This document shows positions 1 to 57,108 of a DNA stretch of 64,000 nt, piece after piece. Source of the DNA: Takakia lepidozioides (Eukaryota; Plantae; Bryophyta); NCBI GenBank assembly GCA_030704615.1, contig CM060734.1, positions 45,012,001 to 45,076,000 of the forward strand, read 5' to 3'. The stretch's first letter is position 1; every line of letters starts with the position of its first letter. A program made the position numbers and the translations under genes. The notes beneath the pieces were generated by a model. That model was not told where the DNA came from. It did no database searches and saw nothing but the letters and a program-made list of their open reading frames with translations.

Positions 1-917
1 ATCTCAAGTATATATGATCAACTCTCGAATGGCCAGAAATTCAGCACCGTGGTTGAGTTTAGAGATGCAACAGGTCGGGTGGAGGTGGAGACAAATTCAC
101 GACAGACATCTACAAACCAACACTCAGAGTCGGAGAAGGCAGATTTGCCTCGACCTCGTGACGAGCGTGACGAGCAGGTGCCCGTAACATCGCCAAATAG
201 GCAATTATTACAAAATGACATAATTTCATCATCTCTTCCGGGACAACCAGAACCCACGACGGTTGTTGAGGCATTACAACATGAAGGATGGAAGCATGCG
301 ATGCACCAAGAAATGGAGTCAATTTATAAGAACGGTACATGGACCCTGGAGGACCTTCCTCCAGGTAAAAATCCCATATCCTCAAAATAGAATTTTAAAA
401 CCAAACACAATGCCTCAGGAGAAGTAGAAAAGCTGAAGGCCAGAATTGTTGCGAGAGATTTCGAACAACGGGAAGGTTTGGATTATGATGAAACTTTTGC
501 CCCATGTGGTAAAGTGGGGAACAATCAATACAATTGTAGCCGTGGGACGTGCTGCTTAAGTCCATAGACATCTCACCCTCACACTCATGGATGCAGACAC
601 TATTTCTTAATAACATCACTCATCTAGATGTGAAAACTGCATTCTTAAATGAGGATTTAAATGAAGAGGTCTACATGTACCAGCCGGAGGGCTTCGTGTC
701 TGAAGGAAATGAGCACAAATTCTGCAGATTGAAGAAGGCACTCTATGGCTTGAAGCAAGCTCCTAGGGCTTGGTACAAGAAAATAGACAAAGTTCTCAGG
801 GATCACGGCATGACTCGTAGCGAACATGATCACAACCTTTACTCTCTCTCTGAAAAAGGGAAACATGTATTCCTACTCTTGTATGTGGATGATCTTCTGC
901 TAACAGGGGACTTATAG
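1..917 (+). mobile_element. Ty1/copia retrotransposon pol (RT) fragment, decayed and truncated
   Basis: [86 protein letters not shown]; stop at 388-390 and frameshifts; ends abruptly after YVDD. Confidence 0.95.
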
Positions 918-1986
918 GACAAATCGAAGCGCTGATACTGTAGAAGTACATGAGAGGATCCACATTTAGTTTCTCCACACCCATCTGATGAAGTCTTAGA
1001 CAAAATAAACATACGGCTGTGCTCTAGATGGTTGCATAGGTCGAAGGATGGACAGGAGTGAGGTAGGGTATTGAAGTTAAAACACTCCTACCCACATTAA
1101 TCACAAGCTATTAGTGTAGCTACTCCCCTGTATACAATTAAGGTGCTGCATGTTACTCCTTGTCAGTCCAGCCATTTACCTACTTCTATGCTGAGCCAAG
1201 AATCATCTATAATCTAGGATCTTAACGTGGCCTCTTTCCTAGCGTTGATATCTAGCCAGTAGTGTTGTATATATATCGTGGTGGTCTGTTCTTATATATA
1301 AAGCTTTCAGCACCACCCACAGCAATATATCAGAGGATTCTCAGCCGATGCCTGATCCACATCAGAAATTGCACATACGCTTAATAGGAGAATGGCTAAA
1401 TATGGGTGCTACATGGGAGGTGAAGCAAAATCCACCATTATCACACCCTCATGAAAATGGCCAAGTCACCATGTAAAGTTGGGAGATTTATGATGTCAAA
1501 GAATAATGTGGGAACCCTGCAGCCAAAATGATTGAAGTACATGAACACCAGATCCTTCACAATAATCGACACCAAGTTGATACAGAGGCCCCCTAGAATT
1601 TACAAAGGCCTACAAACACTGGTTGGGTTGATCAAGAGCATGTGAAGATTCTTGTTCTACATACATTGGGGTCAAAAGCATCTGCTCATTCTGTAACTTC
1701 CAATTTACAAGGATAAAACTATTCCAGGAATAGTGGCACCCTGATGCACCAGTTGATTAGCTACTTGTCTGCCTGATCTAAATCTAGATCTCATAGAAGT
1801 TTAGTCAAATCCTTCAAGAAATTGTTAGACCATATGGTGCTAGAGCTACAAGGTGTTCTTTTAAGATATCAGTAAAAAAGGGAAACAGAGTGCTTGAGCA
1901 GGGTTTTGTGGAGGAAATGAGACTGCTGAAGTTATGGAGAGAATGGGCTCACAAGTCTCAAGGTTATACAGAGAGTTTGTGTGTAC

Positions 1987-4180: not shown

Positions 4181-5989
4181 CAAAATCTTTTAGAATCTCA
4201 GTTTCCCACTATGTCCATACACTGCATGTATGACTCTGAATTGAAAGAAATGAACATTTAGAAAATTGGAAAAACCGGAATTGTTTTTAAATCATGTTGC
4301 AGACTTGTCAAACCAGATGGGCCGCTCTTCGCTGAATCAAAATATCAAGCAACTTACTTATGGTCGAGTGGGCCCGGCCAAATATCTACGTGCTTTGAGA
4401 TTGACAGCACGGGTGTGAAGATAGACTCTACACTACTATTCACAAGCTTTTGAATTTTAAAAGCCCAGATACACAAGCCTCCCTCGAGCCACTTCATGCT
4501 ATTTTAGATAACATTAAACAAAAGTATGGAATACATATTTAGCACTAGAAAAGAAGATTTGAAGTGGACAAAACAATCACGAACTCTCCTTCCCTGTGTT
4601 CCAGCCCTCATACAGCGATCACCCAGTAAAATAGTATGAGAGAGAAGTGTTTTGAAGCAACCTTCAGGGCCGCACCACCGCACAAGTAGGGGCAGAAAAT
4701 AATACCAGAGGGAACTAGACAGCAGGATTTGAACTACATCACATCGACATCTCAGTGTTGGGGTGACATAGCAGTTTTCCTTACCATCTCATTCGGTTGG
4801 TGGGGCCAGACAGATTCAGCTTGACATGCCCCAAAGGCCAAATGTCCGTTACATCCGCCAAGTGTGCAAGATAGAATAGAATGGGTAAAAGTTAGTAAAA
4901 GCCCTCCCGTTCAAAGCGGTGGCTCACTCTCCGGGAGGATGGACACGGCAGACACGGCAGACAGGGAGGGAGAGGGGGATGTGACAAGGTGAGAGTGCAG
5001 CGCGTAAGAGGAGTAGGTAGGTCGATTATGGGCGGTCATGACACCAGCCGGGATGTGACCGCTGCAAAGCAAAAAAAATTAATTAGCCGCCATGTAAGTG
5101 CCCGTATATTCTGTGCTCAGTACTGGCATTGATGATGAATGGATGGAAAGATTGATGTATGCAGCAGGTGTATCGAGAGGAGATATGCAGTATCAGCAGC
5201 AAGGGAGTCATGGCCGTCTACTAGTGCTCTTCAGTGCTTATTCACAGTGCTCTTCATTCAAAGCGCAGTAGTAGTAGTGCTGATCTTGCGTGTTGCTTTG
5301 ATGCGTTGCTGCGTCTCTTCGGCGATCACCTCAGTTAGCAACGTCTCTTCGGCGATCACCTCCGTTTTTGTGCCCGACCTCAGTTCGTGTACGAAGCACC
5401 TCCGTTTTCGTGTCTGACCCACTTTCGTGTTCGTGTATCAGGTTCTGCAAAAATTTCTGGTTTTCGGTAGATATTCACTCATAGCAGACAGTTGGCTACG
5501 TTGATCTCACGTTGTTGGTGTCTCTCTTGACGTTTTCGTGTCTGATCCCAACGGAGGTTTCTGCTGCCTTTCTTTCGGGTTTCATAGGTGGTGTCTCTCT
5601 TGACGTTTTCGTGTCTGATCCCAACTGTTCAAGTTTCTTCTTTCGGGTTTCATAGAAAGTTTCCTTTTAGAGATATTCTTTAGTCGTCTGTTTTAAATCG
5701 ACAGTCTATGTACAATTTCACAACAAATTTGTGTGGATCTAATGTCATGAAGGGTATTTGTAACTCATTCCCTCAAGAGCAAATGGCTTAAAAATGTCTC
5801 AAAATGTGCTTGTCAATCATGTTATGCTAGACTCTTGTGTAGATTACTTTCATGGTGGAGCCAAGGAGTCGATTCACCACGTTTCTGGAGTTGAATTAAG
5901 TCTACGATATGTACCCTCTTGCGCTCCATACCAGACATATAATGAGAGAGGGAAATGAAGTGATGATAGGACATTTATGTGATTTACAG

Positions 5990-8721
5990 AGGAACATTGG
6001 GCTCCAGCTTACTGCTTCAACCCTTCCATGGAGCATGTTGGGAACAAAGGGTTTGAAACCATGTTGCGTCCTATGCCCCCTCCATTTCATAAAATGGCAG
6101 ACCGACGTAGCAAATTGGAACCCACAGGGCAAAGTGATTTTGCAAGTTAGGCCATGGGATATTGGAGATTTGGTTGATTGGAAGAAAGACGGTTGTTGGT
6201 GGCAAGGAAAAATCACTAAAACCATCAAGAGTTGTGTTGAGGTACACAAGCTAACACTCTCCACAACCATGAGACTCCTCATATAACCTCTATTAGGTAA
6301 ATAAGTAGTTTGGCATAAAGTTGTTGTTATATTGTAGTTTTGCTCAGATGTTTGCTTCCTCATGAGAAGCTGAAGTCATTTCAGGTACTACGTCAGTACA
6401 GTTATGCTTGAGTGAAGATGTTGACCTTTCGGCTATACCTACTGAGCATTAGCTTACATCATGGCCGAGCTTCCCATTACTTCTTGAAAAGTGGTAGAAA
6501 CTCAATATGAAGATTAGCTTTACCTATTGAGTCCTAGCTAACCTTGTGGCTAAGTTTTCCCATGACCTCCAAAAAAGTGGTTGAAATTCTGTATGAAAAT
6601 TTGTGTAATGATATGCCCATGAGTGTTACAGTAGTGTTCTATGTGCTCAACACTCAGTGGGGATTGGTAGCAGCTTGTTATTACCATCTATTTATTGCTG
6701 ATGATATTGTGTCTAAGGTTTCCCACAGTAGTGGTAGCAGCTTGTTGGATATGATGTCAACTAGCACTCATCAACTCCATGTATACAGTTCTAAGATTTG
6801 TATAATGAAATGCCCCATGATTTTGAGTGTAGTACTCTAAAGCGTTCTACACCGCCGCCGGCCCCTGGAGCTGAAAAAGTCAATGGGAAGTACCTTGTGA
6901 CTGCCCAAGTTGATGTACCTGAGTGACATGACAATGTTAAGCTTTTGCACTCTCTATATTGCTCAAGTGTAGGTTGTAAGTTGGGATGGTAACATCTGTT
7001 GGTCTTCCCAAATTTCTGAATTAAATATGATACTTGAAGCCACTGTCTTCCCACTGTTTTCTATTATGCACTGATTGGTACATTATTATCAACATCTTGT
7101 TATTTGTTAGGCCATGAAGCCAGAGGTGGACTTTAGGCATTGACTTCTTGGATTCTGTCTTCCCAGATTATGAGATTGATGCATTTGAGAATACTCCTTG
7201 ATTATTCAAACTGAAAATTAACAATATAGTGGGAATCCCCAAAGTTTTAGCATTGGACTGTCCACTGAGCTAAGTGCTTACAGGTTTGCCAGCTGCACAT
7301 GTAAACTAGCTGGCCCTCGCCTCCTAACCTAAATTTCCATTGTCATGTTTAGATATCCTTGCCAGAGCCTCCAGTAGGAGAAGGCGAATCATATTGTGCA
7401 AGATCAAGAGATTTGCGTCCTTCAATGTTGTGGGACATGGAAACAAATATGTGGAGTCTCCCAGCTGCCTCCAAGGTTACCTTCTAACTTCTGATATTGC
7501 GATTGCTTGAGGTTCTTAATGTACTTTCTTCAAGTTGCGAGACATTTTGCCATAGACCTATATTTACTCAGCAATGCATTCGCTTTGGACACAACCTGTT
7601 TAAGACACCCCTATGGTGTCCCTTGCTGCATTGTTGTTACAGGTGGTCTGGCCTGGCCAAGATAATTCTGGTTGTTGTTGGCTCCAGTCTGGTTCACCTA
7701 CCTAGTCGAGGAACCACAAATGTGGCCTGATCCCACCTCTTGCGACGGGAAATGCAAAATGGACTATGCTGTCTGGGACACCAAGAAATATTCTTATGAA
7801 TCTGCTAACTCTTTTCATGCACACCATGTTAAAGTTACGGCTGATAAATGATCTTGAGGCTTAAGTGTCTTGTAATTTGTGCATCAACCAAAGGCTTTTG
7901 TGGGCAGACTTCTTTTGTAACAATTAGAATATGTTTTCCTTCACAGAGAGGTGCCATTGAGGTGCCATGTGCCCAGATGTTGGATATGCCAATGGTGCGC
8001 CCGGATCTTGCAAGAACTGGAGAAAGAGGCGGGGCATCAAACTCCTTCCACAGGTTGCCTACTGGAGTGGAGAGTGCAGGAAACCAAGGAAACCATGCAT
8101 CGCTTAGTGTGAGAGCTGAGAAGAGCTCTTTGACTCCACCCCCGTCACCCGCCATTGCATCATCGGAGCCATCAGACAAGCCCCCTGGTAAACAACTCAC
8201 AAATCCAAGTAGAAAGCCAGTTATGTGATCTACATTCTGTCAGTTTCTGAAGTCTGATGCACTGTGCTATTCCCTTAATAGTGGGTTATACTAAACCCAA
8301 AACTTCCTTCATCTGGCATCTGAAGGTTAGATGATATCAATATACAGTTCAAGGGAGCCACCAATTGCATGGATTCCAGAGTGCCTGAGATTGCAAGAAT
8401 GGAAACCGACTTAGTACAAGGGAATTGACAAAGGTGTGATGAATGTGAAACTTTTTAGTTCAAATATGTATTTCAGGGCCTATGTTGTGAGTTGATCTCC
8501 CTTCCTCCACCTACTTGTTCTCATTGTATATGACAGGAGAAGGGCAAGAGAAGGTAAAAGATGACTCTGGAGCAACTCGAGAGAAACTGCTAAATGGATC
8601 GATGCCTGAACATGCAAGCACACAGCTTGGTGTGGTCAAGAGAGCCATGAAGAAAAAGCAGAAAGTCTACAGTATACTTCTGCACCAGGCGAGAGTCAGG
8701 GCACTTGGAGGATGGTTATAA
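5990..8721 (+). pseudogene. Agenet/Tudor-domain family gene, frameshifted (paralog B)
   Basis: Exon 5990-6241: EEHWAPA..ETMLRPMPPPF, frameshift, KVILQVRPWDIGDLVDWKKDGCWWQGKITK; exon 7353-7475: ISLPEPPVGEGESYCARSRDLRPSMLWDMETNMWSLP; low-complexity exons ~7946-8208 and ~8537-8693; ag/gt sites; no N-terminal exon found. Confidence 0.75.
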
Positions 8722-9899
8722 CAGTTGCCCTTTTTGTGTCCAATGTATTAGTGTTCGGATTCAGTGCTCTCCTACAGATTTAAATTTGCATCTTTATGTA
8801 GCCAATTGTTGGAACCCAGTAGCAAGTAAAGCTGAGCATATCCTCCACTAAGTGGGTATTGCTCAGCACCTAGCTACTGAATAGTGCATCATTGTCTGTT
8901 GTTCAAAATTCTGAAAGTGAATTATTTTGATTCCAAAGTCTGTAAAAAAAGGTTGAACATTTCAAGCTTCCCTGTCCATAGAGGATGGGCTAGCAGAGAT
9001 TTAAAGCTTTTTTGGCATTCAGATTACTGGTCTCATTTGTGCTGTCAAGTTTCTGAAGTGGGGCTGTTGTGACAAAATTAAAAGATGCTTGAGGATTTTC
9101 AGGAGTCATTGCTTGGGCTTTGATGGAAGTGTTGCAATGTTATCCAAGGCCATAAAGAAATTCGGATAAGTAGAGCAATTGTACTCGCAAAGTCATCCAC
9201 GAGACATTCTAAAATTGCTTTAGAAATTCTAAAATTGCTTTAGAAATTAGATGTGAGGAGACAGATGTGTGATGACAATTCTGGATCGTGAATTTGGGGA
9301 TAAGATGAGGTGCTAAGTGTGAGAGACTAGGCATGGCTGACTCTTGTTTTGGTAACATTGGCAATGATTTACCAGAAACTTTAGGTTGCGACCTAGAGGT
9401 TTTGGGGTACCTCTAAACGGATCATACCGTCAATGAAGATTGAGATGCACTGCATTTGCCTATTACAGAAGAATCATGGTAGGGCCTCTCCATAAGCTTA
9501 GCAACAAGGCTGCAGTGAACAGATTCCCCATAAGCCAAATTTAATAGGCAAAGTTCACCTACAAACTGCTCGATGTATGGACCCCTTGCCAATTGTATTT
9601 GGAATACTACTAGAAGGTGGCCTCCTTCTACGGCCCTCTCACAACTCCCCATATGTGAGCTCTATTTCATTCACTTTAAGTTTTGCCTCAACTGCTTCTT
9701 TGAACAACCCATGTTGTATACCATACAAGCTTGCCCCACTCCTCATTGCCATCCAATAGCAGGGCTGCACCATAGCCTTATAGCAATTGTTATATACAAG
9801 CTCAAGCAGTAAATAATTAGTGGTAACTGGTAACATTAATATCTATTTAAGGTAAGCAGCCAACTATGTGTCATGCTCAAGAAAGTTGAGCTAAAATTA

Positions 9900-38403: not shown

Positions 38404-40884
38404 ATGAAAGATTCCACAGTAACTTTGGGGTCAATTCCAATGACCTCACAACTCATTGAGAAGGGATGGAGCCACAGTTCCAATGTGTATCATGTGAAAG
38501 GTGCCTCAGTTGGGGAGAAAATTCTGGTGGTGAGCGACGAGAAGGTAGTGTGGATTGCATTCCCAGGCACCCATGATTACAAGGATGTTGTCACTGATTC
38601 AAAGTTCGGGGAGGTACAAATCACAGACCGCAAACTCAGTGAGAAAACCTGCAAAGAATACTATGGGTGTGGCTTTGATGGGCTCAATGACAACCATGGC
38701 AATCCAGTGTTGGTGCACAAGGGATTCCTACAGCGGTTTGTAGAGATCATGGAGAACAAGAAGCTGTACAATGAGGTGTGGTCTGCTTCCAGATCTTTTC
38801 TCTGATGTTCGGATAACTGGCAATTGAGGCTGACTTTCATGTGAGTTTCAATACATAGTAATTGATTCTGTGTTGTTACATGAGCGCCCTGGATCTCGTA
38901 AAGTGCCATACATCTAGTGAACAGTGCTTGGCATGAGGTCAGAGTGGCTGACTGCTTCGAGTCATCTGGCAAGTGCAGGTGGAGACAGCAAGAGTGGAAG
39001 GGAAGCAAGTAATTTTTACAGGTCACTCACTTGGTGGCGCGATTGCCGTGCTGGCGACCTTGTGGCTGTTGAACCAACAAAAGAGCTCTGAATCAAGAAA
39101 ACATGGAAAGCCGCCTTGTTGTCTGACATTTGGTGCACCCTTACTTGGTGACGCAAAGATGGCTGAGGCTGTTCGCCGCGAGCACTGGGCAGAGCAACTG
39201 TGCCACATTGTGTCACGGCATGACATTGTGCCACGCATTCTCCTGGCACCCCTGGATTCTCTTAAAAAACCATTGAAGGCTCTCATACCTTACTGGTTGA
39301 CAAAAATGAATGCTGGTGAGTCCAAGGATCAGCCCCTCGAAAAGCAAGAGGTAGACAACTTGCTGGCTGTCGTGAAGGGGGGTTTGTCAGCAGTGGCAAA
39401 CTCATTGCTAGGTGCTACCAAAAATGTATTCAAGAACAGCCCATACCGGCCTTTTGGCACCTTCATATTTTGCCACAAGACTGGTGCTGCAAGCTTGGAC
39501 AACCCTGTCATGGTACTTCAGATGCTGTGGGTTACTCTGCAGGAGCATGACAGCAGTCCTGATACCAAGAGAAGCTCTTGCATAATGGAGCATGTACAAT
39601 ACGACAAACACGTTCAAGAGATGGGCGAGGTGAATGCTCCAGGCGTATGGGCTGGCATGGCTATACCTGATGCTCAAACCGTACCTCAAATGTCGGTACT
39701 AAAGGAGCTTCAAATAATTGGTGCTGGAGTCGAAGTGAGTCAAGACAACTGAATGCCAAGTCATTAGCATCTGATGATCTATAGGTGACTTATGGAAGTA
39801 CTCCTTGCAATATGGGGATATTTCTCAACAGAGTGTGTTGGTAGTGTGAAGGCACTTTCACTCCTTCCTCCCTTTCTATCTCTGCATGAAGTATAAATGA
39901 AAGACAACATTTCTGGAACACTCTGCCTTGATTACGTATTTTGACTAATAGCATGGTAATGTCATGATGCAGGCTTTGCAAAGAGCTCCGACGACATCTC
40001 AAAACTTTCTCTCTCAGCAAATGGTGGTGGTTAATCAGCTAGTAAGGGACACTGAGCAGAGGCTTGCTATGAACAGTGCAGGTCGTGCTGCTGCATTCAG
40101 AAAGGTACAAGAGGCTATGGTTGAATTGGAGTGGTATAAGCACAAATGTGAGGAGGAGGGAAGGCACTATTATGATGCTTGCAAAGAGAGGAGGGACCCA
40201 GAAGAACTGCAGGCTTCAAAAAATCGATTGCAGCTTGCTAACTTCTGGGATGAGACGATAGAGCTGTACAACAAAAATCAGCTGCCTGATGATTTTCAGG
40301 TACAAAACAAGTGGGTGAATTCGGGGCATGCCTACCGTCTGTTGGTGGAGCCCCTAGACATTGCTAATTACTATCGCTTGGGGAAGCATGAAGACTCAGG
40401 ACACTACAGGCATCATGGCAGGCCAGGGCGCTACAGAATTGTAGAAAGGTGGTGGCATGAAAAGAAACGAGATCACCCGCGATCCAAACCAGGAAGTTTG
40501 ACTCGAGATTCTCTTTTGTGGGCCTGGCTTGAAGAGGCCCGGGAAGCTCTTGATGTACTGAACCATAACGCTGAGCACACCAGTCTTGAAGAGACAACCG
40601 AAGCTGCTGAGGCTATTGAGGAAACCCAATTGTTAACTGAAGCAATGGATACACTCGAGAAGTTTGAGAAACACGTTGGTGAGGAATATGACGCGCACAG
40701 AATAGCCGATGACTTGTTTATGAAGAAGTGCAGCTGGGTGGCCTGGTGGCGAGACTATCAAGCCACTAAAAGGTGCTTGAAATTTCCTTGGGATCATGCG
40801 AAACAATTTCATCAGCGCATGGAGAGAACATGGGTAAACAATGACCGTGCTTCGGGTTCGTTTCAACCTCATCCGTCTTATTGA
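38404..40884 (+). CDS. EDS1/PAD4/SAG101-family protein (class-3 lipase-like + EP domain), ~679 aa, exons 38404-38775, 38979-39734, 39973-40884
   Basis: GHSLGG nucleophile elbow, TFGAPLLGD, SRHDIVPR, SPYRPFGTF, EHVQY; EP domain LEWYKHKC..YYD..K, LANFWD, YRLLVEPLDIANYYR, GRPGRY, SLTRDSLLWAWLEEA; gt-ag phase-0 introns keep the frame open. Confidence 0.95.
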
Positions 40885-43614: not shown

Positions 43615-43866
43615 TTGTGCAGTGTGTTTACTCCTCTTCTCATATGAGCTTCACCGTCGGCTCCACTCAAGTGACGACTCTTCTCACATCTCAGTTGTGC
43701 ACGGTCTTCTCCTCAGACCCACTCCTCAACTTTATCTGCTTCCCTACAGATTGAGTGCTTAATGTTGCATCGTAGCATATGTGTTCAATATGTGAATCTT
43801 TCCGTAATGACGTTGTCAGGACTGTGCTGGTTACACTTAACGAAGTCCAATCAAAATAGCACTTAC

Positions 43867-44270
43867 AACAAGCTCAAATGCCCCACGGTTTTCTTCATTC
43901 CGAGGGAAGCCATCAATCAGAAACTTATCCTTGCTGCTCTCCTCCATAGTCTTTTGGAGAAGCTTCACCGTCACTTCTGATGGGACGATCTTTCCCTCTT
44001 TAATCATATTCTGTATCATTGTTTGCCAACAGCCAAGTGATTGAATGAATAGGTCAATCCATAAAGATATTGTTTTAACAGAACATAGAGGCCTCTCATT
44101 TTTCAACCTTGCCAAAACTCTTGAATCGGCAAATAGACATCTTATATAGGGCCACACATCCTGTGGTAGACACTCATGCTAGCTTCCCAAAGTTTCCAGG
44201 AAAGCATACAAGACGCATGGCATGACAAGAGTTCCAAAAGATGATACATACCCATTTTCCGAGCCACCGT
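43867..44270 (-). pseudogene. UMP-CMP kinase (adenylate kinase family) fragment, middle exon
   Basis: GSENG|gt at ~44250; exon [52 protein letters not shown]|gtaag; acceptor damaged. Confidence 0.9.
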
Positions 44271-46619: not shown

Positions 46620-47135
46620 GCGACAATTTCTATTGGCGTATTTCGGGCGGGCAGTCCAGGCAGACTGACGAAATTTGACGACGAAACGTGGTGATGATGA
46701 CGTGGCGACGAAAACGTGGCACTATGGCACCCTATTCCTACTCTACACTAAACTAGCTTCCGACCTTCTGTCGTCGCTAGAACTAGGGCTTCGCGTTGCT
46801 CTGCACTACTAGAGACGAATTCTGAGAACAAAGTTCAATTTTTCACAAAAAAAAGGGTGGGTCATCCCTGCGGTGTTACTTGAAGAGGTCCCGTGTTTTG
46901 TTTTTTCTGAAGAAAATGGCGGATCTGCATTTCAATGTTCAATTTTCACAAGCCGCATCAATCAATAACAACATACCCAAATACCCTTACATTCACTATA
47001 TGAACTTCCAAGCATCCACCATGGGATTGGATCTTGGTGGGTTAAGGCTAGCTTTTGACAATATTCATGCACGTTCGTCAAGGGCTCCATCAAAAGCCAC
47101 ATCACGAGAAACAAACAAACATGTCCAAATTTAAG
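46620..47135 (-). repeat. Inverted copy of the block at 50925-51435 (third copy at 56768-57106)
   Basis: Near-identical sequence; all three translate as ADLHFNVQFSQAAS..RETNK in the ORF track. Confidence 0.9.
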
Positions 47136-47139
47136 TTGT

Positions 47140-47930
47140 TGTTCTCAGCTCAGCATGGATTTCCTTAGTTCTGGGATGCAACTTGTCATCTACAACAAAG
47201 GTGTGCACCCTGTTGCCAACCTCAATGCAGCAGCGACCTGGCTCCTTTCTAACCCCTCTGACCTTCATCATTCTTCTCACCTTTGCAGTATCATCTCACC
47301 TGCCAGCTGCAGCATAGATGTTTGATAGCAACACATAAGTCGCGGCATCCTGTTCATCCCACTTGAGGACAGATGTTGCCGCACGTTCAGCCATCTCCAC
47401 ATTGCCATGGATTCTGCAGGCACCAAGCAAGGCCTGAACCACACCACAACATCTGGATTGATTGGCATTTTATTAATGAGGTCCACTGCCTCATCCAGTT
47501 GTACCACACGTCCAAGAAGGTCCACCATGCAGCCAAAGTGCTTTACTGTCGGAGTGACACCATGATCTTGACTCAGGGAATCAAAGTAGCGTCTTCCTTC
47601 ATTCAGTAGGCCAGTGTGGCTGCATGCAGAGAGAACACATATAAACGTGATACTGTCCGGCTTCAAACATTGCAAATGCACACAAACGTGATGTGGTTGC
47701 ACTTCACCCCTTCTCCCATCATTTGCTCATAGGTCTCCAAGGCCTCCATCCCGCGCCCCCGCTGTGCATATCCTGCAAGCATGGCGTTCCATGACACCAA
47801 ATCTTGTTCAGCCATATTGTTGAACACTCCCTCCACATCCTCAATGCTCCCACATTTGGCATACATGTCCATGAGGGTATTGTTCAGAATCACATCTGGT
47901 ACATTTCCAGCTTTGGCAATGCAACCATGC
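47140..47930 (-). pseudogene. PLS-PPR E/E+ pseudogene
   Basis: NTLMDMYAKCGSIED, VLSACSHTGLLNEG, HFGCMVDLLGR, RKEPGRCCIEVGNRVHTFVVDDKLHP; frameshifts; truncated. Confidence 0.9.
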
Positions 47931-48474
47931 ACCATAGCGACGAAATAGCCTAGATAATAAGTTGCTGCAAATGGGGACCGTCCCTCTTCGCCACAAATAG
48001 ATGCTGAAAGGAAGAGGTCATCCAGGTAGAACCTGCAAAGGCCACACCAGCTGCTCACACTCCACTTCATTGCCTAGCCATGGGAAAAACCAACAAGTTA
48101 GAAAGAATCTGTCCAAGCCTTCTGGCACTAGCCATCCTCCTCACCAAATATTTCTCCTGCATTGATATGTCTAATCCACAAATCTCACTTTTCTTGTACA
48201 ATGACTGTCAGGCTGGGATGGAGACAAATGATTTAAGGTAAGAAGATTTTAGGTTTCTGTCTAACAACAATTGGAGACTATCACTCTTCAACCCACCCTC
48301 ATCTGTCACAGTCATAGAGAGCAAGATGAGAAGTGACCAACCAGTGCTATATGCTCCGTTCAGACCACGAGCCAAATAGCGAGTGCCAGGATGCAGACGG
48401 CTCCGTCGGGCAGTGAGTGCCACTGTTACTTGTCGGTCCTTGGCATCAGGGAATGACCGCGACTCTGCGAGACC
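47930..48474 (-). pseudogene. SAC9: SAC9-like phosphoinositide phosphatase fragment (2 exons) fused to a PPR fragment
   Basis: Exon 48474-48342 reads GLAESRSF..VALTARRSRLHPGTRYLARGLNGAYSTG; exon from 48073 reads NEVECEQLVWPLQVLPG*PLPFSIYLWRRGTVPI. Confidence 0.85.
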
Positions 48475-48849
48475 CTGCCCGCACAAGTAAACTAAAAACT
48501 TACTGCCTATGCTAATTCACTGCCCACACAAGTAAACCCGACACTGATAATTGCACTGGACATCACCTGCTAATACACAGAGCGAACAATTAGTGTTTGG
48601 CACTGCTACAGCAAATCCCAGACGTCTGTCTACTAGACTAGTCACACACAGATTGAGCAAATCTGGAAGAGAACCCCACCATCACTCATTTGAAAAATAA
48701 TACAAAGACAAACACCTGCAGTCCTATTGGTCATGTACACCTTCATCCCACACCCACGGAAGTAGCAACAGAGTTTTGGTAGCCTCAGTATGGTGCAGCC
48801 TTGCAGCCTCAACCTAAAACACGAGTGACAGTACTTTAGGAACAGCAGA

Positions 48850-49850: not shown

Positions 49851-50134
49851 GTACTTTTCCATGCTCACCTTCACACAACTTCTCCTATCTTGTTTACAAC
49901 AAGGCAAGTCCCTATGTAATGCAATTGTGAATCGCCATGTTATAATCAGGTTGAGTGTCCTGGATGGTTCAAATGATATCTATACTTGAGCAATGTCTAA
50001 AAACAATCAGAGCAGGCCTTGCACCAGTGCTTGTTCATAATGCATCTTGTAACTGAGAGTGCAAACTGTGATCAAGGAATCTTCATAAACTGACGAAGTG
50101 CCAAGTTTCCAACGGCCAGTGGCATTGCATTAAT

Positions 50135-50559
50135 GCCACAACTTATGTGTTGCTATATCAAACATCTATGCTGCAGTTGGCAGGTGGGATGATACTGCAA
50201 AGGTGAGAAGAATGATGAAGGTCAGAGGGGTTGGAAAGGAGCCAGATGACAAGTTACATCCCAGAATTAAGGAAATCCATGCTGAGTTGAGAAGATTGTC
50301 TGGGCAAATGAAGGAGGCGGGGTATGTGCCTGGCACACGCTTTTTATTGCATGATGTGGAGGAAAGGAATTTTCTCTTTGCCACCAAGGCCATTCATTTT
50401 GGGTTGATCAGCACGACTCGTCAAGAATCTTCGAGTGTGTGGAGACTGCCATACCTCCACCAAATTCAACGATTGTTGGCCGAGCAATTGTTGTATGGGA
50501 CGCTAACTACTTTCCACCACTTTGAAGATGAGATTTGTTCTTGTGGTGATTACTGGTGA
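50135..50559 (+). pseudogene. PPR E+/DYW-domain pseudogene fragment
   Basis: HPRIKEIHAELRRLSGQMKEAGYVP..FHHFEDEICSCGDYW*; HxE region deleted or frameshifted; duplicate of 56045-56485. Confidence 0.9.
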
Positions 50560-51808
50560 AATGATGTTTTCTTGGAAAGATGCGAGTGTCTTGCTTCATT
50601 CATTGATCCGTGACGTAGCTACTCACTATCCACCATTTTCCCGAAAGTATTGACCATGATGTACTGTTGAGTGCATTTCCTGTGCCATAAATCCACAGGA
50701 AATGATAGTGGGGTCTACCCGGCATAGGTGGGAAGTCAGCCCATAACTGCACTTGACTGAAGGGGTGATTTTTGACTGATTATGGGGACAGTGGATGGAA
50801 ATCAGAGTGCCGTCGTAATTCTGGGTTTGGGTGGTGGAGCTTCTCCAAAGCTTGAAGATGGAAGTGAATACGAATTTTAATGAGCTTGATGAGAGGGGCA
50901 GCCTTGTGCACAAGTTTGTTCAGCATCTTAAATTTGGACATCTTTGTTTGTTTGTTTCTCGTGGTGTGGCTTTGGATGGAGCCCTTGACGAACTTGCATG
51001 AATATTGTCAAAAGCTAGCCTTAACCCACCAAGATCCAATCCCATGGTGGATGCTTGAAAGTTCATACAGTGAATGTAAGGGTATTTGGGTATGTTGTCA
51101 TTGGTTGATGCGGCTTGTGAAAATTGAACATTGAAATGCAGATCCGCCATTTTTCTTCCAGAAAAAAACAAAACACGGGACCTCTGCATGTAACACAGTG
51201 GGGATGACCCACCCCTTTTTTTTGTGAAAAATTGAAGGTAGTTCTCAAAATTCGTCGCTAGTAGTGCGGAGCAATGCGAAGCCCTAGTTCTAGCGAAGAC
51301 TGAAGGTCAGAAGCTAGTTTAGCGTAGAGCAGGAATAGGGTGCCAAAGTGCCACGTCAACATCGCCACGTTTCGTAGTCAAATTCTGTCGAGTCTGCCCT
51401 GATTGCCCGTGCGAAAAACCCCAAAGCGCCAAGTTGTTTTGGAATTGCCCGGACTGCCCGGTTCTTGAAGTTCTTGAACTGCAGGAGCTATGCGTTTTCC
51501 GTCCCTCGTGCACTTTGCAAGCTCTCAACAGTCTCGCTGCTCAATGCAAACCGTGGCCTTTCCCTCATTTGATCAGCTTCGGTTTTCGTGCAAAGGCTCC
51601 GCAGATCACATCATTTTGCTTATGACTGAAAATGAGATGTTTGAAAAACTGTATTATATATGTTCCTCTAAATTCAGTTGGTGATATCTGAACTTTTCAG
51701 AACTGCATGGGCAAGTTAGGATGGCATATGTGAAGATGTTCTGCATCACACAAGGTTTCACTATTATTGATCTAGGTCTGGTGGTCAAACATTGGGTTGT
51801 GCACTCAG

Positions 51809-52340
51809 GTGTGTGCTCTGCAATGGAACCGGCATCAAAAGGAGATACTGAGCAGCCATGGGTTCAGCCAGAATCAACTGTGCTTGCGGAAGTATCCATC
51901 TATGGCCAAAATTGCTGAACTCACTGGTCACACTGCCCGTGTTCTCCATCTTGCCCAGGTTTTAAGACTTCTTTCTGTTGACATTCTAGTGTTTCCAAAG
52001 ATGACAATTTGCAGAATTTCATTTCATATTACACTTGCGTTTGTACTACTCTAGGGTTCAGAGGAGCCGTGTTGCAGCTCTGGCTCGAAAATGCACATGT
52101 GGATCCATAATGCCACTGGCGGTCCAACATCGTCATTGCCATCGTTTGTTGAAATTGAGTGAATTACTCATGATTTTAGTGCTGTAATTTGTGTAGAGCC
52201 CTGATGGAACAATGGTAGTCTCCGCTGCTGCGGATGAGACACTTCGCTTTTGGAAGGTATTTGGGATGGCACAACCTGTCAAGAAGGTCTCCATGGGAGG
52301 AACTGGTGATCTGTCATTGCGAAGTATTAACATAAGATAG
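51809..52340 (+). pseudogene. CDC20: CDC20-like WD40 gene fragment (last two exons)
   Basis: 51809-51958 reads [50 protein letters not shown]; 52197-52340 reads [28 protein letters not shown] (IR tail); no upstream exons seen. Confidence 0.88.
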
Positions 52341-52679: not shown

Positions 52680-53657
52680 CAGTTGGCTTTGGAGATCTAT
52701 GAGCAAAACAGAAAGGGGTTATGCCCAACCAGGTAACGGTTGTGTGCGTTCTCAATGCATGTGCCAGCCTGGTGGCTGAACGAGATGTGCTCTCCTGGAG
52801 TGCAATGATTTCAGGATATGCCCAGCATGGAGTTGGTAGGGAGGCTTTGGAGACATATGAGCGAATGATATGGGAAGGGGTGACACCAACCAGGTACCTT
52901 TTGTTTCTGTTTTCAATGCCTGTGCCAGCCTGGCAGCCCTGGGAAAGGCCACAGAAATCCATGCTGACATTATCAAAGCTGGAATTTCACTTTGGAAAGT
53001 ACCCTTGTTGACATGTATGCCAAATGCGGGGATATAAAGAATGCATGGCTAGTGTTTGACAATATGGTTGAACGAGATGTGGTCTCATGGAGTGCTATGA
53101 TTGCAGGATATGCTCAGCACGGGTGTGGTAGGGTGGCCCTGCAACTATTGGAACAAACGCAACAGGAAGGGTTGAAGCCGAATGGTATCACTTTTATATG
53201 TGTTCTCTCTGCATGTAGCCATGTGCGACTAGTAGATGAAGGCAGTCATTACTTTGATTCTATGAGTCAAGCTCATGGCCTTACTTCCACAGACCAGCAT
53301 TTTGGTTGCATGGTGGACCTTCTAGGCCGTGCAGGGCATGTGGATGAGGCAGAGGACTTCATCAAGAAAATGCCAAGCGAACCAGCTGCTACAGTCTGGG
53401 GGACTTTGCTTGGTGCCTGCAGAATTCATGGGAATCTGGAGGTGGCAGAACGTGCAGCAGAATACCTTCTTGAGTGGGATCCGCAGGATGCGGCAACGTA
53501 TGTGCTTCTATCCAACATCTATGCTGCAGCTGGCAGGTGGGACAATGCCGCAAAGGTGAGGAGGGTGATGTGGGACAGAGGTGTCAGGAGGGAGCCTGGT
53601 CAATGCTGCATAGAGGTCTATAGTCAGGTGCAATCGAGGCAATTGAGTGTTTTATAA
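52680..53657 (+). pseudogene. PLS-PPR with E domain, 5'-disrupted
   Basis: 221-aa open stretch LVDMYAKCG..CMVDLLGRAG..LLGACRIHGN..YVLLSNIYAAAGRW..RREPGQCCIEV; upstream repeats frameshifted; no DYW. Confidence 0.88.
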
Positions 53658-54479
53658 GTGTTTTATACAGCCATGGGAATTTTCTTTGAAATGGCAGCTA
53701 CAAAAGCGAATTTATAGCCTCCATTCTTCCTTTCTCTACTGTCCAAAAACCAATCAGAAGGTTCATGGATACAGCAGGCAAGGGTACCACTGACAGTTTG
53801 GAGGCTGTAATGGCTGCATGTGTGTGGGGAAATAGAAGCCCCTCTTGGAACAGGAGTAAGATTGACCTGCATTGGCAGCATCCGCAGGCAAGTCATGCAC
53901 CTTTCATGTACCCTCTTCTTCCACTACACAACATGTCCTTCAAGAAATTCTGCTTTGATTACCCAATAACTGTGTTGTATTTGTGGATACATCTCAATGT
54001 GTTTATCCTTCGACTTGCTCCATTTCATGCAGGATTCAGTGTGTAGCCTGCTAACAGCACCAACGGATGTGCACACAATAAGAGCTAAGCACCAAGTGCA
54101 TGCCATTGCCAGAGAGGGATGGAGGATCAGATGAGGGTTTGACAGATTCAACAAAAATCATTAACAGAGGGTGGCTGAACACTGGGAATTCTACTGCTCG
54201 CTCACAGTCCCGAATGTGCATGGATTAATGAATGGGAAGTCCAAAACACTGGATGGGATGCCTTCCCTTCCTCACCCATTCATTATGTTCCTGTTAACAA
54301 TGGCTGGGATGCTATCCCTTGCAATACTACAGTTAATGATGAACACAATCCTTCAGGTGGGTGGTCAACCTCCAACACTGCGATAGACCCCAATTGGGTT
54401 CCTTCTGGAAGAGAAACAGACGAGTTGTGGCTGGCCCGTCATGGAGGCAAATGACAAAGTCAATGCCATGCCATCACAA

Positions 54480-56485
54480 TGTGCATGCAGGGTATGCACA
54501 ACAGGGACGTGGTATGGAGGCTTTGGAGACTTATGAACAAATGATGGGAGAAGGTGTGAAGCCCGACCACATCACGTTTGGGTGCGTTTGCAAGCCTGGC
54601 AGCTCTGGAAAGGGGCAAAGAGGTCCATGGCGACATTGTCAGAGCTACAATTGTACCAAATGTCATTATGAACAATACCCCCATGGACATGTATGAAGGG
54701 AGTGTCCGTTAGTATGGCTGAACGAGATGTGGTGTCATGGAGTGTGATGATTGTAGGATATGCACAGCAAGGGCTCGGGATGGAGGCTTTGGAGACCTAT
54801 AAGCAAATGATGTGCGAAGGGGGTGAAGCCCAACCACATGACGTTTGTTTGCATTTGCAATGCGTGTGCAAGCCTGGCAGCCTGGAAAAGTGCAAAGAGG
54901 TCCATGGTGACATTATCAAATCTGGAAGTGTACCCGATGTCATTCTGAACACTGCCCTGGTGGACATGTATGTCAAATGTGGGTGCATCGAGGATGCAAA
55001 TGGAGTGTTTGACAGTATGGCTGAACGTGATGTGGTGTCGTGGAGTGTGATGATTGCAAGATATGCACAGCAAGGGTGCGGGATGGAGGCGTTGGAGACC
55101 TATGAGCAAATGATGTGCGAAGGGGTGAAAACCAACCACATCACATTTGTTTGTGTTTGCAAATGCGTGTGCAAGCCTGGGAGCTCTGGAAAAGGGGAAA
55201 GAGGTCCATGGTGACATCGTTAAAGCTGGAATTGTACCAGATGTCATCCTGAACACTGCCCTGGTGGACATGTATGCCAAATGTGGGTGCATTAAGGATG
55301 CGAAGGGAGTTAATTTCAACCCTATGGCTGAACGAGATGTGGTGTCGTGGAACGCGATGCTTGCAGGGGTATGCACAGCAGGGGCGTGGGATGGAGGCTT
55401 TGGAGACCTATGAGCAAATGATGGGGGAAGGGGTGAAGCCCAACCACATCACGTTTGTGTGCGTTTGCAGTTTGTGCAGCCCTGGAAAAGGGCAAAGAGG
55501 TGCATGGTTGCATCGCCAAAGCTGGAATTGTACCAGATGTGATTCTGAACAATACCCTCGTGGCTCATATATGCCAAATGTGGAAGCATTGAGGATGCGG
55601 AGGGAGTGTTCAACAGTATGGCTGAACGAGATTTGGTGTCATGGAACGCCATGCTTGCAGGATATGCACAGCAGGGGCGCGGGATGCAGGCCTGGAGACC
55701 TATGAGCAAATGATGGGGGAAGGGGTAGAAGTGCAACCACATCAGTATCACCTTTATATGTGTTCTCTCTGCAAGCCACACTGGCTTACTGAATGAAGGA
55801 AGATGCTACTTCGATTCCTTGAGTCAAGGTCATGGTGTCACCCCGCCAGTGAAGCACTTTGGCTGCATGGTGGACCTTCTGGACGTGCGGGACAACTACA
55901 TGAGGCAGTGGACCTGATTAGTAAATGCCAATCAATCCAGATGTTGTGGTGTGGAAGGCCTTGCTTGGTGCTTGCAGAATCCATGGCAATGTGGAGATGG
56001 CTGAATGTGTGGCAACATCTATCCTCAAGTGGGATGAACAGGATGCCGCGACTTATGTGTTGCTATATCAAATATCTATGCTGCAGCTGGCAGGTGGGAT
56101 GATACTGCAAAGGTGAGAAGAATGATGAAGGTCACAGGGGTTAGAAAGGAGCCAGATGACAAGTTGCATCCCAGAATTAAGGAAATCCATGCTGAGCTGA
56201 GAAGATTGTCTGGGCAGATGAAGGAGGCGGGGTATGTGCCTGACACACGCTTTTTACTGCATGATGTGGAGGAAATGAATTTTCTCTTTGCCACCAGAGT
56301 GAGAAGCTGGCCATTGGTTTTGGGCTGATCAACACGACTCATCAAGAATCTTCGAGGGTGTGGAGACTGCCACACCTCCACCAAATTCATCTCAAAGATT
56401 GTTGGCCGAGCAATTGTTGTATGGGACACTAACTACTTTCCACCACTTTGAAGATGGGATTTGTTCTTGTGGTGATTACTGGTGA
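54480..56485 (+). pseudogene. PLS-PPR-DYW pseudogene
   Basis: About four tandem P-L-S triplets with many frameshifts, E domain, CHQSEKLAIGFGL, CGDCH, CSCGDYW*. Confidence 0.92.
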
Positions 56486-57108
56486 AAGGATGTTTTCTTG
56501 GAAAGATGCTAGTGTCTTGCTTCATTCATTGATCTGTGTAGCTACTCAGACCATCCACCATTTCCTGATAGTGGGGTCTACCCGGCATAGGTGGGAAGTC
56601 AGCCCACAATTGCACTTGACTGAAGGGGTGATTCTTGACTGATTCTGGTGCTGTCCTAATTCTGGGTTTGGGTGGTGGAGCTTCTCCAAAGCTTCAAGAT
56701 GGAAGTGAATACGAATTTTAATGAGCTTGATGAGAGGGGCAGTCCTGTGCACAAGTTTGTTCAGCATCTTAAATTTGGACATGTTTGTTTGTTTCTCGTG
56801 GTGTGGCTTTGGATGGAGCCCTTGACGAACTTGCATGAATATTGTCAAAAGCTAGCCTTAACCCACCAAGATCCAATCCCATGGTGGATGCTTGAAAGTT
56901 CATATAGTGAATGTAAGGGTATTTGGGTATGTTGTTATTGATTGATGCGGCTTGTGAAAATTGAACATTGAAATGCAGATCTGCCTTTTTTCTTCCAGAA
57001 AAAACAAAACACGGGATCTCTGCATGTAACAGTGTGGGGATGACCCACCCTTGAACGTAGTTCTCAGAATTCGTCGCTAGTAGTGTGGAGCAACGGGAAG
57101 CCCTAGTA

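What the first reader, a model, noticed from the sequence alone, without database searches (positions are those of the whole stretch)
38404..40884. Intact EDS1-family immune gene in what looks like a non-seed plant
Seen: complete lipase-like plus EP-domain gene with the S-D-H triad (GHSLG, HDIVP, EHVQY) and the EPLDIA motif. Established: the EDS1/PAD4/SAG101 family, which receives TIR-derived nucleotide signals, is generally described as restricted to seed plants. Inference: the neighbouring PPR/DYW style (HAELRRLSGQMKEAGYVPDTRFLLHDVEE; highly regular MAERDVVSW repeats) and compact introns look moss- or fern-like. If so, this pushes back the family's origin or indicates horizontal transfer.
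Basis: partly seen in the sequence, partly recalled or inferred. Interest (0 to 1): 0.82.

Follow-up and report, generated by a model that had tools for sequence, protein, structure and literature searches.

The report
Intact EDS1-type immune gene, probable moss
The window holds a complete, well-conserved gene of the EDS1 plant-immunity family in a genome that is probably an early-branching moss; recent reviews say this family is missing from mosses, so it may be as old as land plants.

Summary
At 38404-40884 (+) lies an intact three-exon gene (124+252+303 = 679 codons, GT-AG introns of 203 and 238 bp). It encodes a class-3 lipase-like domain with the Ser-Asp-His triad and a full EDS1 EP domain (Pfam 8.9e-55). 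The EP model has pLDDT 90 and matches only EDS1, PAD4 and SAG101 chains in the PDB.

It is not a close copy of any seed-plant gene; the best match is 50% identity to Ginkgo. In trees of both domains it pairs with one gene from an unlabelled sequencing run. That pair sits in an unresolved knot at the base of the EDS1 and PAD4 clades, next to a Selaginella copy.

Both introns lie where Amborella EDS1 has them. Five of six Arabidopsis EDS1 residues that contact the TIR-made nucleotide are identical, and the sixth is Thr to Ser.

Earlier follow-ups of this scan call the genome "probably Takakia" and found a broken paralogue on another piece of it. The dense PPR-DYW debris here fits that.

Most likely reading: a vertically inherited, selectively maintained EDS1-type receptor in a non-seed plant. 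Recent literature says mosses lack EDS1; rare fern homologues are already reported.

The parts
38404..38775 (+). Exon 1 (124 codons): N-terminal part of the lipase-like domain, starting at the ATG
   Evidence: ORF list and sequence. In-frame stops lie upstream, and the N-terminus aligns from Met1 with Ginkgo, Amborella and Picea family members. Matches Ginkgo, Picea and Taxus N-termini by blastp.
38776..38978 (+). Intron 1 (203 bp, GT-AG, phase 0)
   Evidence: Donor AATGAG|GTGTGG and acceptor GTGCAG|GTG. It lies exactly 12 residues before [F/L]TGHS, the same position and phase as intron 1 of Amborella EDS1.
38979..39734 (+). Exon 2 (252 codons): core of the class-3 lipase-like alpha/beta-hydrolase domain with the Ser-Asp-His triad and the alpha-H helix
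   Evidence: Pfam Lipase_3 3.9e-19. The only PDB sequence hits are EDS1, PAD4 and SAG101, led by OsPAD4 at 3.6e-35 and tomato EDS1 at 1.1e-33.
39027..39029 (+). Catalytic-type Ser (GHSLG), equivalent to AtEDS1 S123
   Evidence: Alignment to 7xdd_B; coordinates.
39222..39224 (+). Triad Asp (RHDIVP), equivalent to AtEDS1 D187
39591..39593 (+). Triad His (MEHVQY), equivalent to AtEDS1 H317
39402..39452 (+). Alpha-H helix region (SLLGATKNVFKNSPYRP), the partner-binding 'LLIF' helix of EDS1
   Evidence: Aligned to AtEDS1 253-269. Positions 254/258/261/262 read L/T/V/F, so three of four are hydrophobic.
39735..39972 (+). Intron 2 (238 bp, GT-AG, phase 0) in the linker between the two domains
   Evidence: Donor GTCGAA|GTGAGT and acceptor GATGCAG|GCT. 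Without splicing, the frame ends at a TGA 15 nt downstream. Amborella EDS1 has a phase-0 intron within about 3 residues of this point.
39973..40884 (+). Exon 3 (303 codons plus TGA): complete EP domain and C-terminal tail
   Evidence: Pfam EDS1_EP 8.9e-55. AlphaFold model has pLDDT 90 and pTM 0.87 and is all-helical. Foldseek: all 24 chains with E<0.001 are EDS1, PAD4 or SAG101, with TM by query up to 0.68.
40348..40434 (+). EP-domain ligand-pocket segment EPLDIANYYRLGKHEDSGHYRHHGRPGRY
   Evidence: Aligned to AtEDS1 466-494. D469, N472, Y473, K478 and R493 are identical and T482 is Ser. These are the pRib-ADP contacts named in bioRxiv 10.1101/2022.04.01.486681. The stretch EPLDIANYYRLGKHEDSGHY is identical in Ginkgo Gb_07529.

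Best explanation
This is an intact, spliced nuclear gene for a 679-residue EDS1-family protein: a lipase-like alpha/beta-hydrolase domain followed by an EP helical domain. The genome is most probably a non-seed plant. Earlier follow-ups of this scan say the early-branching moss Takakia; I did not verify that.

The gene descends vertically from a family member that already existed before mosses and seed plants parted. It branches at or below the split of seed-plant EDS1 and PAD4.

By inference from the conserved pocket residues, its EP domain binds a ribosylated nucleotide made by TIR-domain enzymes (of the pRib-AMP/ADP type). It would then pass the signal on, presumably as a dimer (with itself or with a paralogue) and presumably to an RPW8-type helper NLR.

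Shown: gene integrity, domain identity, fold, residue conservation, intron homology, deep divergence and purifying selection. Inferred: ligand binding, dimer state, downstream partner, expression and host identity.
For: - **Domains and fold:** Lipase_3 and EDS1_EP hits. PDB sequence hits are only family members. The EP model has pLDDT 90 and matches only EDS1, PAD4 and SAG101 structures.
- **Conserved residues:** the triad aligns to AtEDS1 S123, D187 and H317. AtEDS1 ligand contacts D469, N472, Y473, K478 and R493 are identical and T482 is Ser; R425 is also kept. All five invariant and 16 near-invariant EP columns of a 44-sequence alignment are kept.
- **Gene structure:** three exons. Intron 1 is at exactly the Amborella EDS1 position and phase, and intron 2 is within about 3 residues at the same phase.
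- **Not a recent seed-plant copy:** best identity is 50% (Ginkgo Gb_07529), out of 1.84 billion representatives.
- **Trees:** careful trees of the EP domain and of the lipase-like domain agree. The window pairs with L001 (100/96 and 100/92). The pair sits in a basal polytomy with Ginkgo Gb_07529, Selaginella, the PAD4 clade and the EDS1 clade. The best EP tree puts window, L001 and Selaginella together against all seed-plant rows.
- **Selection:** against L001, synonymous sites are saturated (pS 0.76). Non-synonymous change is 0.16 in the pocket core. L001 has an extra intron. So the two carriers diverged long ago under constraint.
- **Local context:** gene GC is 0.47 and the flanks are 0.42-0.47. 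The gene lies about 4.5 kb from a Gypsy element of a type noted repeatedly in this genome. The surroundings hold PPR-DYW debris typical of PPR-expanded early land plants.
Against: - The host organism was not identified here.
- Ginkgo Gb_07529 also falls outside the three supported seed-plant clades. A gymnosperm could therefore carry a gene in this tree position.
- There is no expression evidence for this copy.
- No partner (a second family member, TIR gene or NLR) lies in the window.
- One of the four alpha-H 'LLIF' positions is Thr, and AtEDS1 F419, H476 and K487 are not kept.
- The non-seed grouping has weak support (54/35), and the family tree cannot be rooted.
Confidence: 0.68

Rival explanations
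1. The host is a seed plant after all, for example a gymnosperm not represented in the protein collections. The gene would then be its copy of the orphan basal paralogue seen in Ginkgo (Gb_07529), and the finding would be ordinary.
For: Ginkgo Gb_07529 is the closest named relative at 50% identity and has an identical 20-residue pocket motif. It sits in the same unresolved polytomy. A Taxus family gene is equally compact, 2.4 kb for 615 residues, so short introns do not exclude a gymnosperm. I did not verify the organism.
Against: Identity of 50% or less to every seed-plant protein in NCBI, UniRef and EukProt is low for a within-seed-plant orthologue. The best tree groups the gene with Selaginella rather than Ginkgo. 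The window carries several broken PPR-PLS/DYW copies with a shared flanking repeat. PPR counts above 1,500 are listed there for hornworts, Takakia and lycophytes (PMC13386178). Thirteen earlier findings of this scan mention Takakia, one of them on a moss-type mitogenome piece (unverified).
Confidence: 0.1
2. A non-seed plant acquired the gene by ancient plant-to-plant horizontal transfer of genomic DNA from an early seed-plant (Ginkgo-like) lineage.
For: The family is missing from the well-studied mosses and liverworts (PMC11850516, PMC9806590). Only one close relative was found in 5.8 billion clusters. The nearest named sequence is from Ginkgo.
Against: The gene is not nested in any seed-plant clade with support. 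A second carrier has saturated synonymous divergence and a different intron set. Further divergent copies exist in Selaginella and in an unlabelled assembly. GC content matches the flanks. A patchy distribution is equally explained by repeated loss, which the broken Selaginella copy illustrates.
Confidence: 0.1
3. The gene is a silent or decaying relic. It is still open but no longer expressed or functional in TIR signalling, or it has been kept for another role such as a true lipase.
For: There is no expression evidence. It sits in a transposon-rich region full of gene fragments. A paralogue on another piece of the genome is reported as broken. The Selaginella copy has an in-frame stop. No partner gene is nearby. 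An intact triad would also allow hydrolase activity.
Against: All 679 codons are open with canonical splice sites, while the neighbouring PPR genes are riddled with frameshifts. All family-invariant EP residues and the ligand contacts are kept. pN is 0.16 in the pocket core against saturated pS relative to L001.
Confidence: 0.1
4. The locus is contamination or a misassembly from seed-plant DNA.
For: None directly; this is only the general risk for surprising genes.
Against: No seed-plant sequence is more than 50% identical. By the offsets of earlier notes, the gene lies at least 23 Mb into its sequence piece. It is flanked on both sides by repeats and PPR debris typical of this genome. GC content is continuous across the locus.
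Confidence: 0.02

Closest known systems
Arabidopsis EDS1 (PDB 4NFU, 7XEY, 7XJP; AtEDS1) and rice EDS1 (8ZF0_B)
   Same: Same two-domain architecture, S-D-H triad and EPLDIANY(Y/H)R core. Ligand contacts D469, N472, Y473, K478 and R493 are identical. The K-x-E-D-(S/T)-G stretch is of the EDS1 type. The three-exon layout is shared with Amborella EDS1.
   Different: Only 32-37% identity in the EP domain to the angiosperm EDS1 rows compared. F419, H476 and K487 are not kept, and one LLIF position is Thr. It is about 55 residues longer, with an insertion in exon 1 and an acidic C-terminal linker. It does not fall inside the supported seed-plant EDS1 clade.
Ginkgo biloba Gb_07529 (EukProt EP01018_P037610)
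   Same: Closest named protein: 50% identity in the EP domain and 39-45% in the lipase-like domain. The EPLDIANYYRLGKHEDSGHY motif is identical, and it sits in the same unresolved basal tree position.
   Different: It comes from a seed plant that also has canonical EDS1- and PAD4-clade genes. It is not specifically sister to the window gene in the best tree.
PAD4 (AtPAD4 7XEY_B, OsPAD4 8ZF0_C)
   Same: Best PDB scores overall are to OsPAD4 (1.6e-34 for EP, 3.6e-35 for the lipase-like domain). PAD4 also keeps the S-D-H triad. The EP model superposes best on PAD4 chains, with TM by query 0.65-0.68.
   Different: The pocket segment is EDS1-like rather than PAD4-like: PAD4 has IA(E/D/N)(Y/F)... 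and R-E-R-R in place of R-P-x-R. The gene lies outside the starred PAD4 clade.
Non-seed EDS1-like sequences: Selaginella moellendorffii 'EDS1B-like, LOW QUALITY PROTEIN' (GL377675.1), the fern homologues reported in BMC Biol 2025 (PMC12512272), the unlabelled contig L001 (Logan SRR22405887 and SRR36092047) and L003 (GCA_030012885.1)
   Same: All are Lipase_3 plus EP, or EP, genes outside seed plants. L001 is the sister of the window gene in both domain trees. Selaginella joins them in the best EP tree.
   Different: The Selaginella copy has an in-frame stop right after EPLDIANY. L001 is cut by its contig end and has an extra intron. L003 shows only a divergent EP ORF. The window gene is the only complete, open non-seed copy that I could see. 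I did not examine the fern sequences.

Membership tests
EDS1 family (EDS1/PAD4/SAG101) | C-terminal EP domain (Pfam PF18117), which uniquely defines the family (PMC9806590) | tested here: met
   186 bits against a cut-off of 23.1, E 8.9e-55, profile positions 2-200 of 211. The model has pLDDT 90 and matches only EDS1, PAD4 and SAG101 chains.
EDS1 family (EDS1/PAD4/SAG101) | N-terminal class-3 lipase-like alpha/beta-hydrolase domain in the same polypeptide, upstream of the EP domain | tested here: met
   Lipase_3 3.9e-19 on exon 2, and PDB hits are family members only. The linkage rests on a GT-AG splice model whose introns match Amborella EDS1. No RNA evidence was obtained, and the joined protein was not searched.
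EDS1 and PAD4 (as opposed to SAG101) | Conserved Ser-Asp-His triad | tested here: met
   The triad aligns to AtEDS1 S123, D187 and H317.
EDS1 proper | EP-cavity residues that contact pRib-ADP or are needed for TIR-NLR immunity (D469, N472, Y473, K478, T482, R493; bioRxiv 10.1101/2022.04.01.486681 and PMC6377607) | tested here: met
   Five are identical and T482 is Ser; R425 is also kept. K440/K441 read N/K.
EDS1 proper | Hydrophobic alpha-H helix ('LLIF': positions 254, 258, 261, 262) that binds PAD4 or SAG101 | tested here: inconclusive
   The positions read L, T, V, F, so three of four are hydrophobic.
EDS1 proper | Phylogenetic placement inside the EDS1 clade rather than PAD4 or SAG101 | tested here: inconclusive
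   The gene lies in a basal polytomy with the EDS1 clade (90/95), the PAD4 clade (99/97), Ginkgo Gb_07529 and Selaginella. It is clearly outside the group formed by SAG101 and the conifer (Picea/Taxus/Cryptomeria) sequences (100/99).
EDS1 signalling module | A heterodimer partner (PAD4- or SAG101-type paralogue) | not testable with these tools
No second family member is in the window.
EDS1 signalling module | Co-occurring TIR enzymes and ADR1/NRG1-type (RPW8) helper NLRs | not testable with these tools
   No TIR domain is in the window. First-reader notes list TIR-NLR genes elsewhere in this genome, and none mentions RPW8 or ADR1.
EDS1 family | Expressed, correctly spliced transcript | not testable with these tools
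No transcript-derived protein of this gene is in the collections.

The most novel reading that the evidence does not exclude
An early-branching moss keeps a working EDS1-type receptor that predates the EDS1/PAD4 split. In that case the pathway from TIR enzyme to nucleotide signal to EDS1 would date to the last common ancestor of land plants and would have been lost repeatedly, including in the model bryophytes. Its ancestral form may have worked as a homodimer with a symmetric EP pocket.
Probability: 0.35. Interest if true: 0.85.

Novelty: new member of a known kind. Interest (0 to 1): 0.72.

Why it matters
TIR-domain immune enzymes occur in all land plants. Their only known receptors, the EDS1-family dimers, are described as a seed-plant invention (bioRxiv 10.64898/2026.05.20.726525), and a 2025 review says they are absent in mosses (PMC11850516). 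How non-seed TIRs signal is therefore an open question.

An intact, constrained EDS1-type gene with a conserved nucleotide pocket in a moss would move the origin of the module to the base of land plants. It would recast the absence in Physcomitrium and Marchantia as loss. It would also offer a pre-duplication protein for testing whether a single EDS1-like protein can bind TIR products and engage helper NLRs.

Tried and rejected
- **Organism from neighbouring genes:**
  - Pfam scans of 30 stop-free stretches found only transposon, PPR and gene-fragment hits.
  - The Gypsy pol search gave at most 54% identity, and the top hits were unnamed.
  - Rfam and the tRNA scan found nothing.
  - Paper searches for SRR22405887, SRR36092047 and GCA_030012885 found nothing.
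- **Intron length as a marker:** rejected as a sign of a non-gymnosperm host, because a Taxus family gene is equally compact.
- **Partners in the window:** I looked for a second family member, a TIR domain or an NB domain and found none.
- **More members of the window/L001 clade:** a profile search found none.
- **dN/dS:** no numerical ratio can be given because synonymous sites are saturated.
- **Earlier findings:** a search by sequence returned nothing.
Full report
**1. What is there**

The region 38404-40884 on the plus strand holds three open stretches.
- They join through canonical sites: AATGAG|GTGTGG...GTGCAG|GTG and GTCGAA|GTGAGT...GATGCAG|GCT.
- The result is 124 + 252 + 303 = 679 codons ending in TGA.
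- Introns are 203 and 238 bp, and both are phase 0.
- Upstream of the ATG the frame is closed, and exon 1 aligns from its first Met with the N-termini of Ginkgo, Picea and Amborella family members.
- Without the second splice, the frame ends 15 nt after the donor.

The joined protein was never searched or folded.

**2. Family identity**

- Exon 2 matches Pfam Lipase_3 (3.9e-19). Exon 3 matches EDS1_EP (8.9e-55, 186 bits, cut-off 23.1).
- Against all PDB sequences, both exons hit only EDS1, PAD4 and SAG101 chains.
- I folded exon 3 with a 44-sequence alignment. The model is all-helical, with mean pLDDT 90 and pTM 0.87.
- By Foldseek, all 24 PDB chains with E<0.001 are EDS1, PAD4 or SAG101. The next hit has E 0.49.

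**3. Residues**

- The Ser (39027-39029), Asp (39222-39224) and His (39591-39593) align with AtEDS1 S123, D187 and H317.
- The EP segment EPLDIANYYRLGKHEDSGHYRHHGRPGRY (40348-40434) aligns with AtEDS1 466-494.
- The EDS1 residues that contact pRib-ADP in the EDS1-PAD4 structure are D469, N472, Y473, T482 and R493, plus K478 (bioRxiv 10.1101/2022.04.01.486681). Five are identical here and T482 is Ser.
- R493 and K478 are the cavity residues needed for TIR-NLR immunity (PMC6377607).
- Not kept are F419 (Leu), H476 (Leu) and K487 (His). K487A had no phenotype in Arabidopsis.
- The partner-binding alpha-H helix reads L/T/V/F at the 'LLIF' positions.
- All five invariant and 16 near-invariant EP columns of the family alignment are retained.

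**4. Relatives**

- An exhaustive HMMER search of 1.84 billion representatives gave 299 hits. No self or near-self hit was present.
- The best hits are Ginkgo Gb_07529 (50%) and P0001 (51%), a 252-residue ORF on a 12-kb contig assembled from SRR36092047 and SRR22405887 (locus L001).
- Word-based searches agree, including one with a window+P0001 profile. They add a Selaginella 'EDS1B-like, LOW QUALITY PROTEIN' and an EP ORF in GCA_030012885.1 (L003).
- Named cluster members let me label three seed-plant clades. They are EDS1, PAD4 (with Ginkgo Gb_12427/9), and SAG101 together with a group of conifer (Picea, Taxus, Cryptomeria) sequences.

**5. Phylogeny**

- In a careful IQ-TREE analysis of 50 EP domains, the window gene and L001 pair at 100/96.
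- The pair lies in an unresolved polytomy with four other lineages: Ginkgo Gb_07529, Selaginella, the PAD4 clade (99/97) and the EDS1 clade (90/95).
- All of these are separated from the clade formed by SAG101 and the conifer sequences (100/99).
- The best tree already has window + L001 + Selaginella as one side of a branch against all 47 seed-plant rows, though weakly (54/35).
- The lipase-like domain gives the same picture, with the pair at 100/92. The two domains therefore share one history.
- The tree cannot be rooted because the EP domain has no outgroup. The position fits a lineage that left before, or about when, EDS1 and PAD4 separated.
- The pocket motif is EDS1-like rather than PAD4-like.

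**6. Gene-structure homology and age**

- Amborella EDS1 (locus L005) has phase-0 introns at RFQKK|VQKAQESKEKLILTGHS and EFGL|GTKAR.
- The window has KLYNE|VETARVEGKQVIFTGHS and GAGVE|ALQRA.
- Intron 1 is at the identical position, 12 residues before [F/L]TGHS. Intron 2 is within about three residues, in a poorly alignable linker.
- L001 has an additional phase-2 intron inside the EP domain (EIDYYIFG|CQEEKKHYYD) that the window lacks.
- Between the window and L001, synonymous sites are saturated (pS 0.76, and 0.92 in the core). pN is 0.36 overall and 0.16 in residues 85-160 around the pocket.
- These are therefore old, independently evolving nuclear genes under purifying selection. They are not retrocopies or recent transfers.

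**7. Host organism**

This is the weak point.
- No protein in the collections is near-identical to the EP exon or to the Gypsy pol ORF of this window. The genome is therefore not represented there.
- Earlier follow-ups of this scan on the same genome call it 'probably' or 'most likely' Takakia. One concerns a moss-type mitogenome piece. These are unverified leads.
- One of those notes (s1-469977) reports a transcribed but broken EDS1-family copy on another piece of this genome, plus an open copy in a second moss. The scan has therefore met this family in this genome before. The present window holds the intact copy.

My own indirect evidence is as follows:
- The gene lies outside every supported seed-plant clade.
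- The window carries at least four broken PPR-PLS/E/DYW pieces. Three of them have a shared flanking repeat of 360-520 bp at 88-89% identity.
- PPR counts above 1,500 are listed for hornworts, Takakia (2,016 PPRs) and lycophytes (PMC13386178).

Short introns are not diagnostic, because a Taxus family gene is equally compact. I put the probability of a non-seed host at about 0.85 and of a moss at about 0.75.

**8. Contamination and transfer**

- The gene's GC content (0.47) matches its flanks.
- It lies about 4.5 kb from a Gypsy element of the permuted-LTR type noted in many windows of this genome.
- By the offsets of earlier notes, it lies at least 23 Mb into its sequence piece.
- Nothing supports contamination.
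- An ancient plant-to-plant transfer cannot be excluded, but nothing requires it. The patchy distribution is equally explained by loss. The Selaginella copy shows such decay: an in-frame stop at L004 6443-6445, directly after EPLDIANY, with EP homology continuing in frame at 6446-6712.

**9. Literature**

- A May 2026 preprint states that EDS1 signalling is a derived trait of seed plants and that robust EP homology is known only there (10.64898/2026.05.20.726525).
- Johanndrees et al. 2022 report non-seed land plants without EDS1-family genes (PMC9806590).
- A 2025 study found rare fern homologues and proposed that the pathway is ancestral to tracheophytes (PMC12512272).
- The only paper in the library holding both 'EDS1' and 'Takakia' is that fern study. 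The bryophyte super-pangenome paper does not mention EDS1 (PMC12513842).
- A bryophyte member is thus undocumented in the searchable literature.

**10. Mechanism**

Shown: an intact gene, family membership, fold, pocket conservation and long-term constraint.

Inferred: the protein dimerises through the lipase-like domains, and its EP domain forms half of a pocket for a TIR-made ribosylated nucleotide. Ligand binding would then recruit a helper NLR. First-reader notes list TIR-NLR genes elsewhere in this genome (unverified).

Open: whether the partner is a second copy of itself or a paralogue. No partner lies in the window.

In the two other non-seed loci, the EDS1-like ORF sits 2-4 kb from a TIR gene. 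This hints at a functional link.

**11. Verdict**

The gene is a new, deep-branching member of a known family. It is of high interest for the evolution of plant immunity if the moss identity and expression hold.

Noticed in passing
L004 (Selaginella moellendorffii GL377675.1) 5001-6712 and 8083-9180: The NCBI 'EDS1B-like, LOW QUALITY' gene ends at an in-frame stop (6443-6445) right after EPLDIANY, and EP homology continues in the same frame at 6446-6712. It is therefore a broken copy or a sequencing error. A TIR-NB gene lies about 2 kb downstream on the same strand, and cysteine-rich receptor kinases flank the pair.
   Followed up: partly
L003 (GCA_030012885.1, JASCQV010002970.1) 469-972 (-) and 5001-5732 (+): An unlabelled plant assembly has a divergent EP-domain ORF (Pfam 2.3e-16) about 4 kb from a divergently oriented TIR-domain ORF. 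No lipase-like part was detectable in the 5 kb of flank fetched upstream of the EP ORF. Together with Selaginella, this is a second case of an EDS1-like ORF next to a TIR gene in what look like non-seed genomes.
   Followed up: partly
L001 (Logan SRR36092047 and SRR22405887) 2-2598: The sister gene of the window's EDS1-like gene is cut by the contig end inside the lipase-like domain. It has an extra phase-2 intron (about 1527-1809) inside the EP domain that the window gene lacks. It keeps the same pocket residues (K478-, S482- and R493-equivalents).
   Followed up: partly
window 46633-47141, 50921-51424 and 56762-57107, with adjacent PPR ends at 47134-47400, 50133-50556 and 55991-56432: A repeat of 360-520 bp (88-89% identical) occurs three times. 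Each copy abuts the 3' (E/DYW) end of a broken PPR gene, and those ends are themselves 94-98% identical.
   Followed up: partly
window 52700-56432 (+): A long PLS-PPR-E-DYW array is split over all three frames. MAERDVVSW recurs at 54714, 55017 and 55324, a spacing of 303-307 bp, or one P-L-S triplet. This points to recently homogenised repeats in a pseudogene.
   Followed up: no
window 51776-52051 (+), 48211-48516 (-), 43840-44178 (-): Isolated gene fragments sit among the PPR debris with no other exons visible nearby. They are a CDC20/Fizzy WD40 piece (8.5e-18), a SacI-homology piece (1.2e-05) and one adenylate/UMP-CMP-kinase-type exon (2.2e-11). They may be captured fragments.
   Followed up: no
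P0030 (Ginkgo biloba Gb_07529): Ginkgo carries a family member that falls outside the supported EDS1, PAD4 and SAG101-group clades in both domain trees. Its 20-residue pocket motif is identical to the window gene's. It may be a relic of the pre-duplication form kept in a seed plant.
   Followed up: partly
   Followed up: partly
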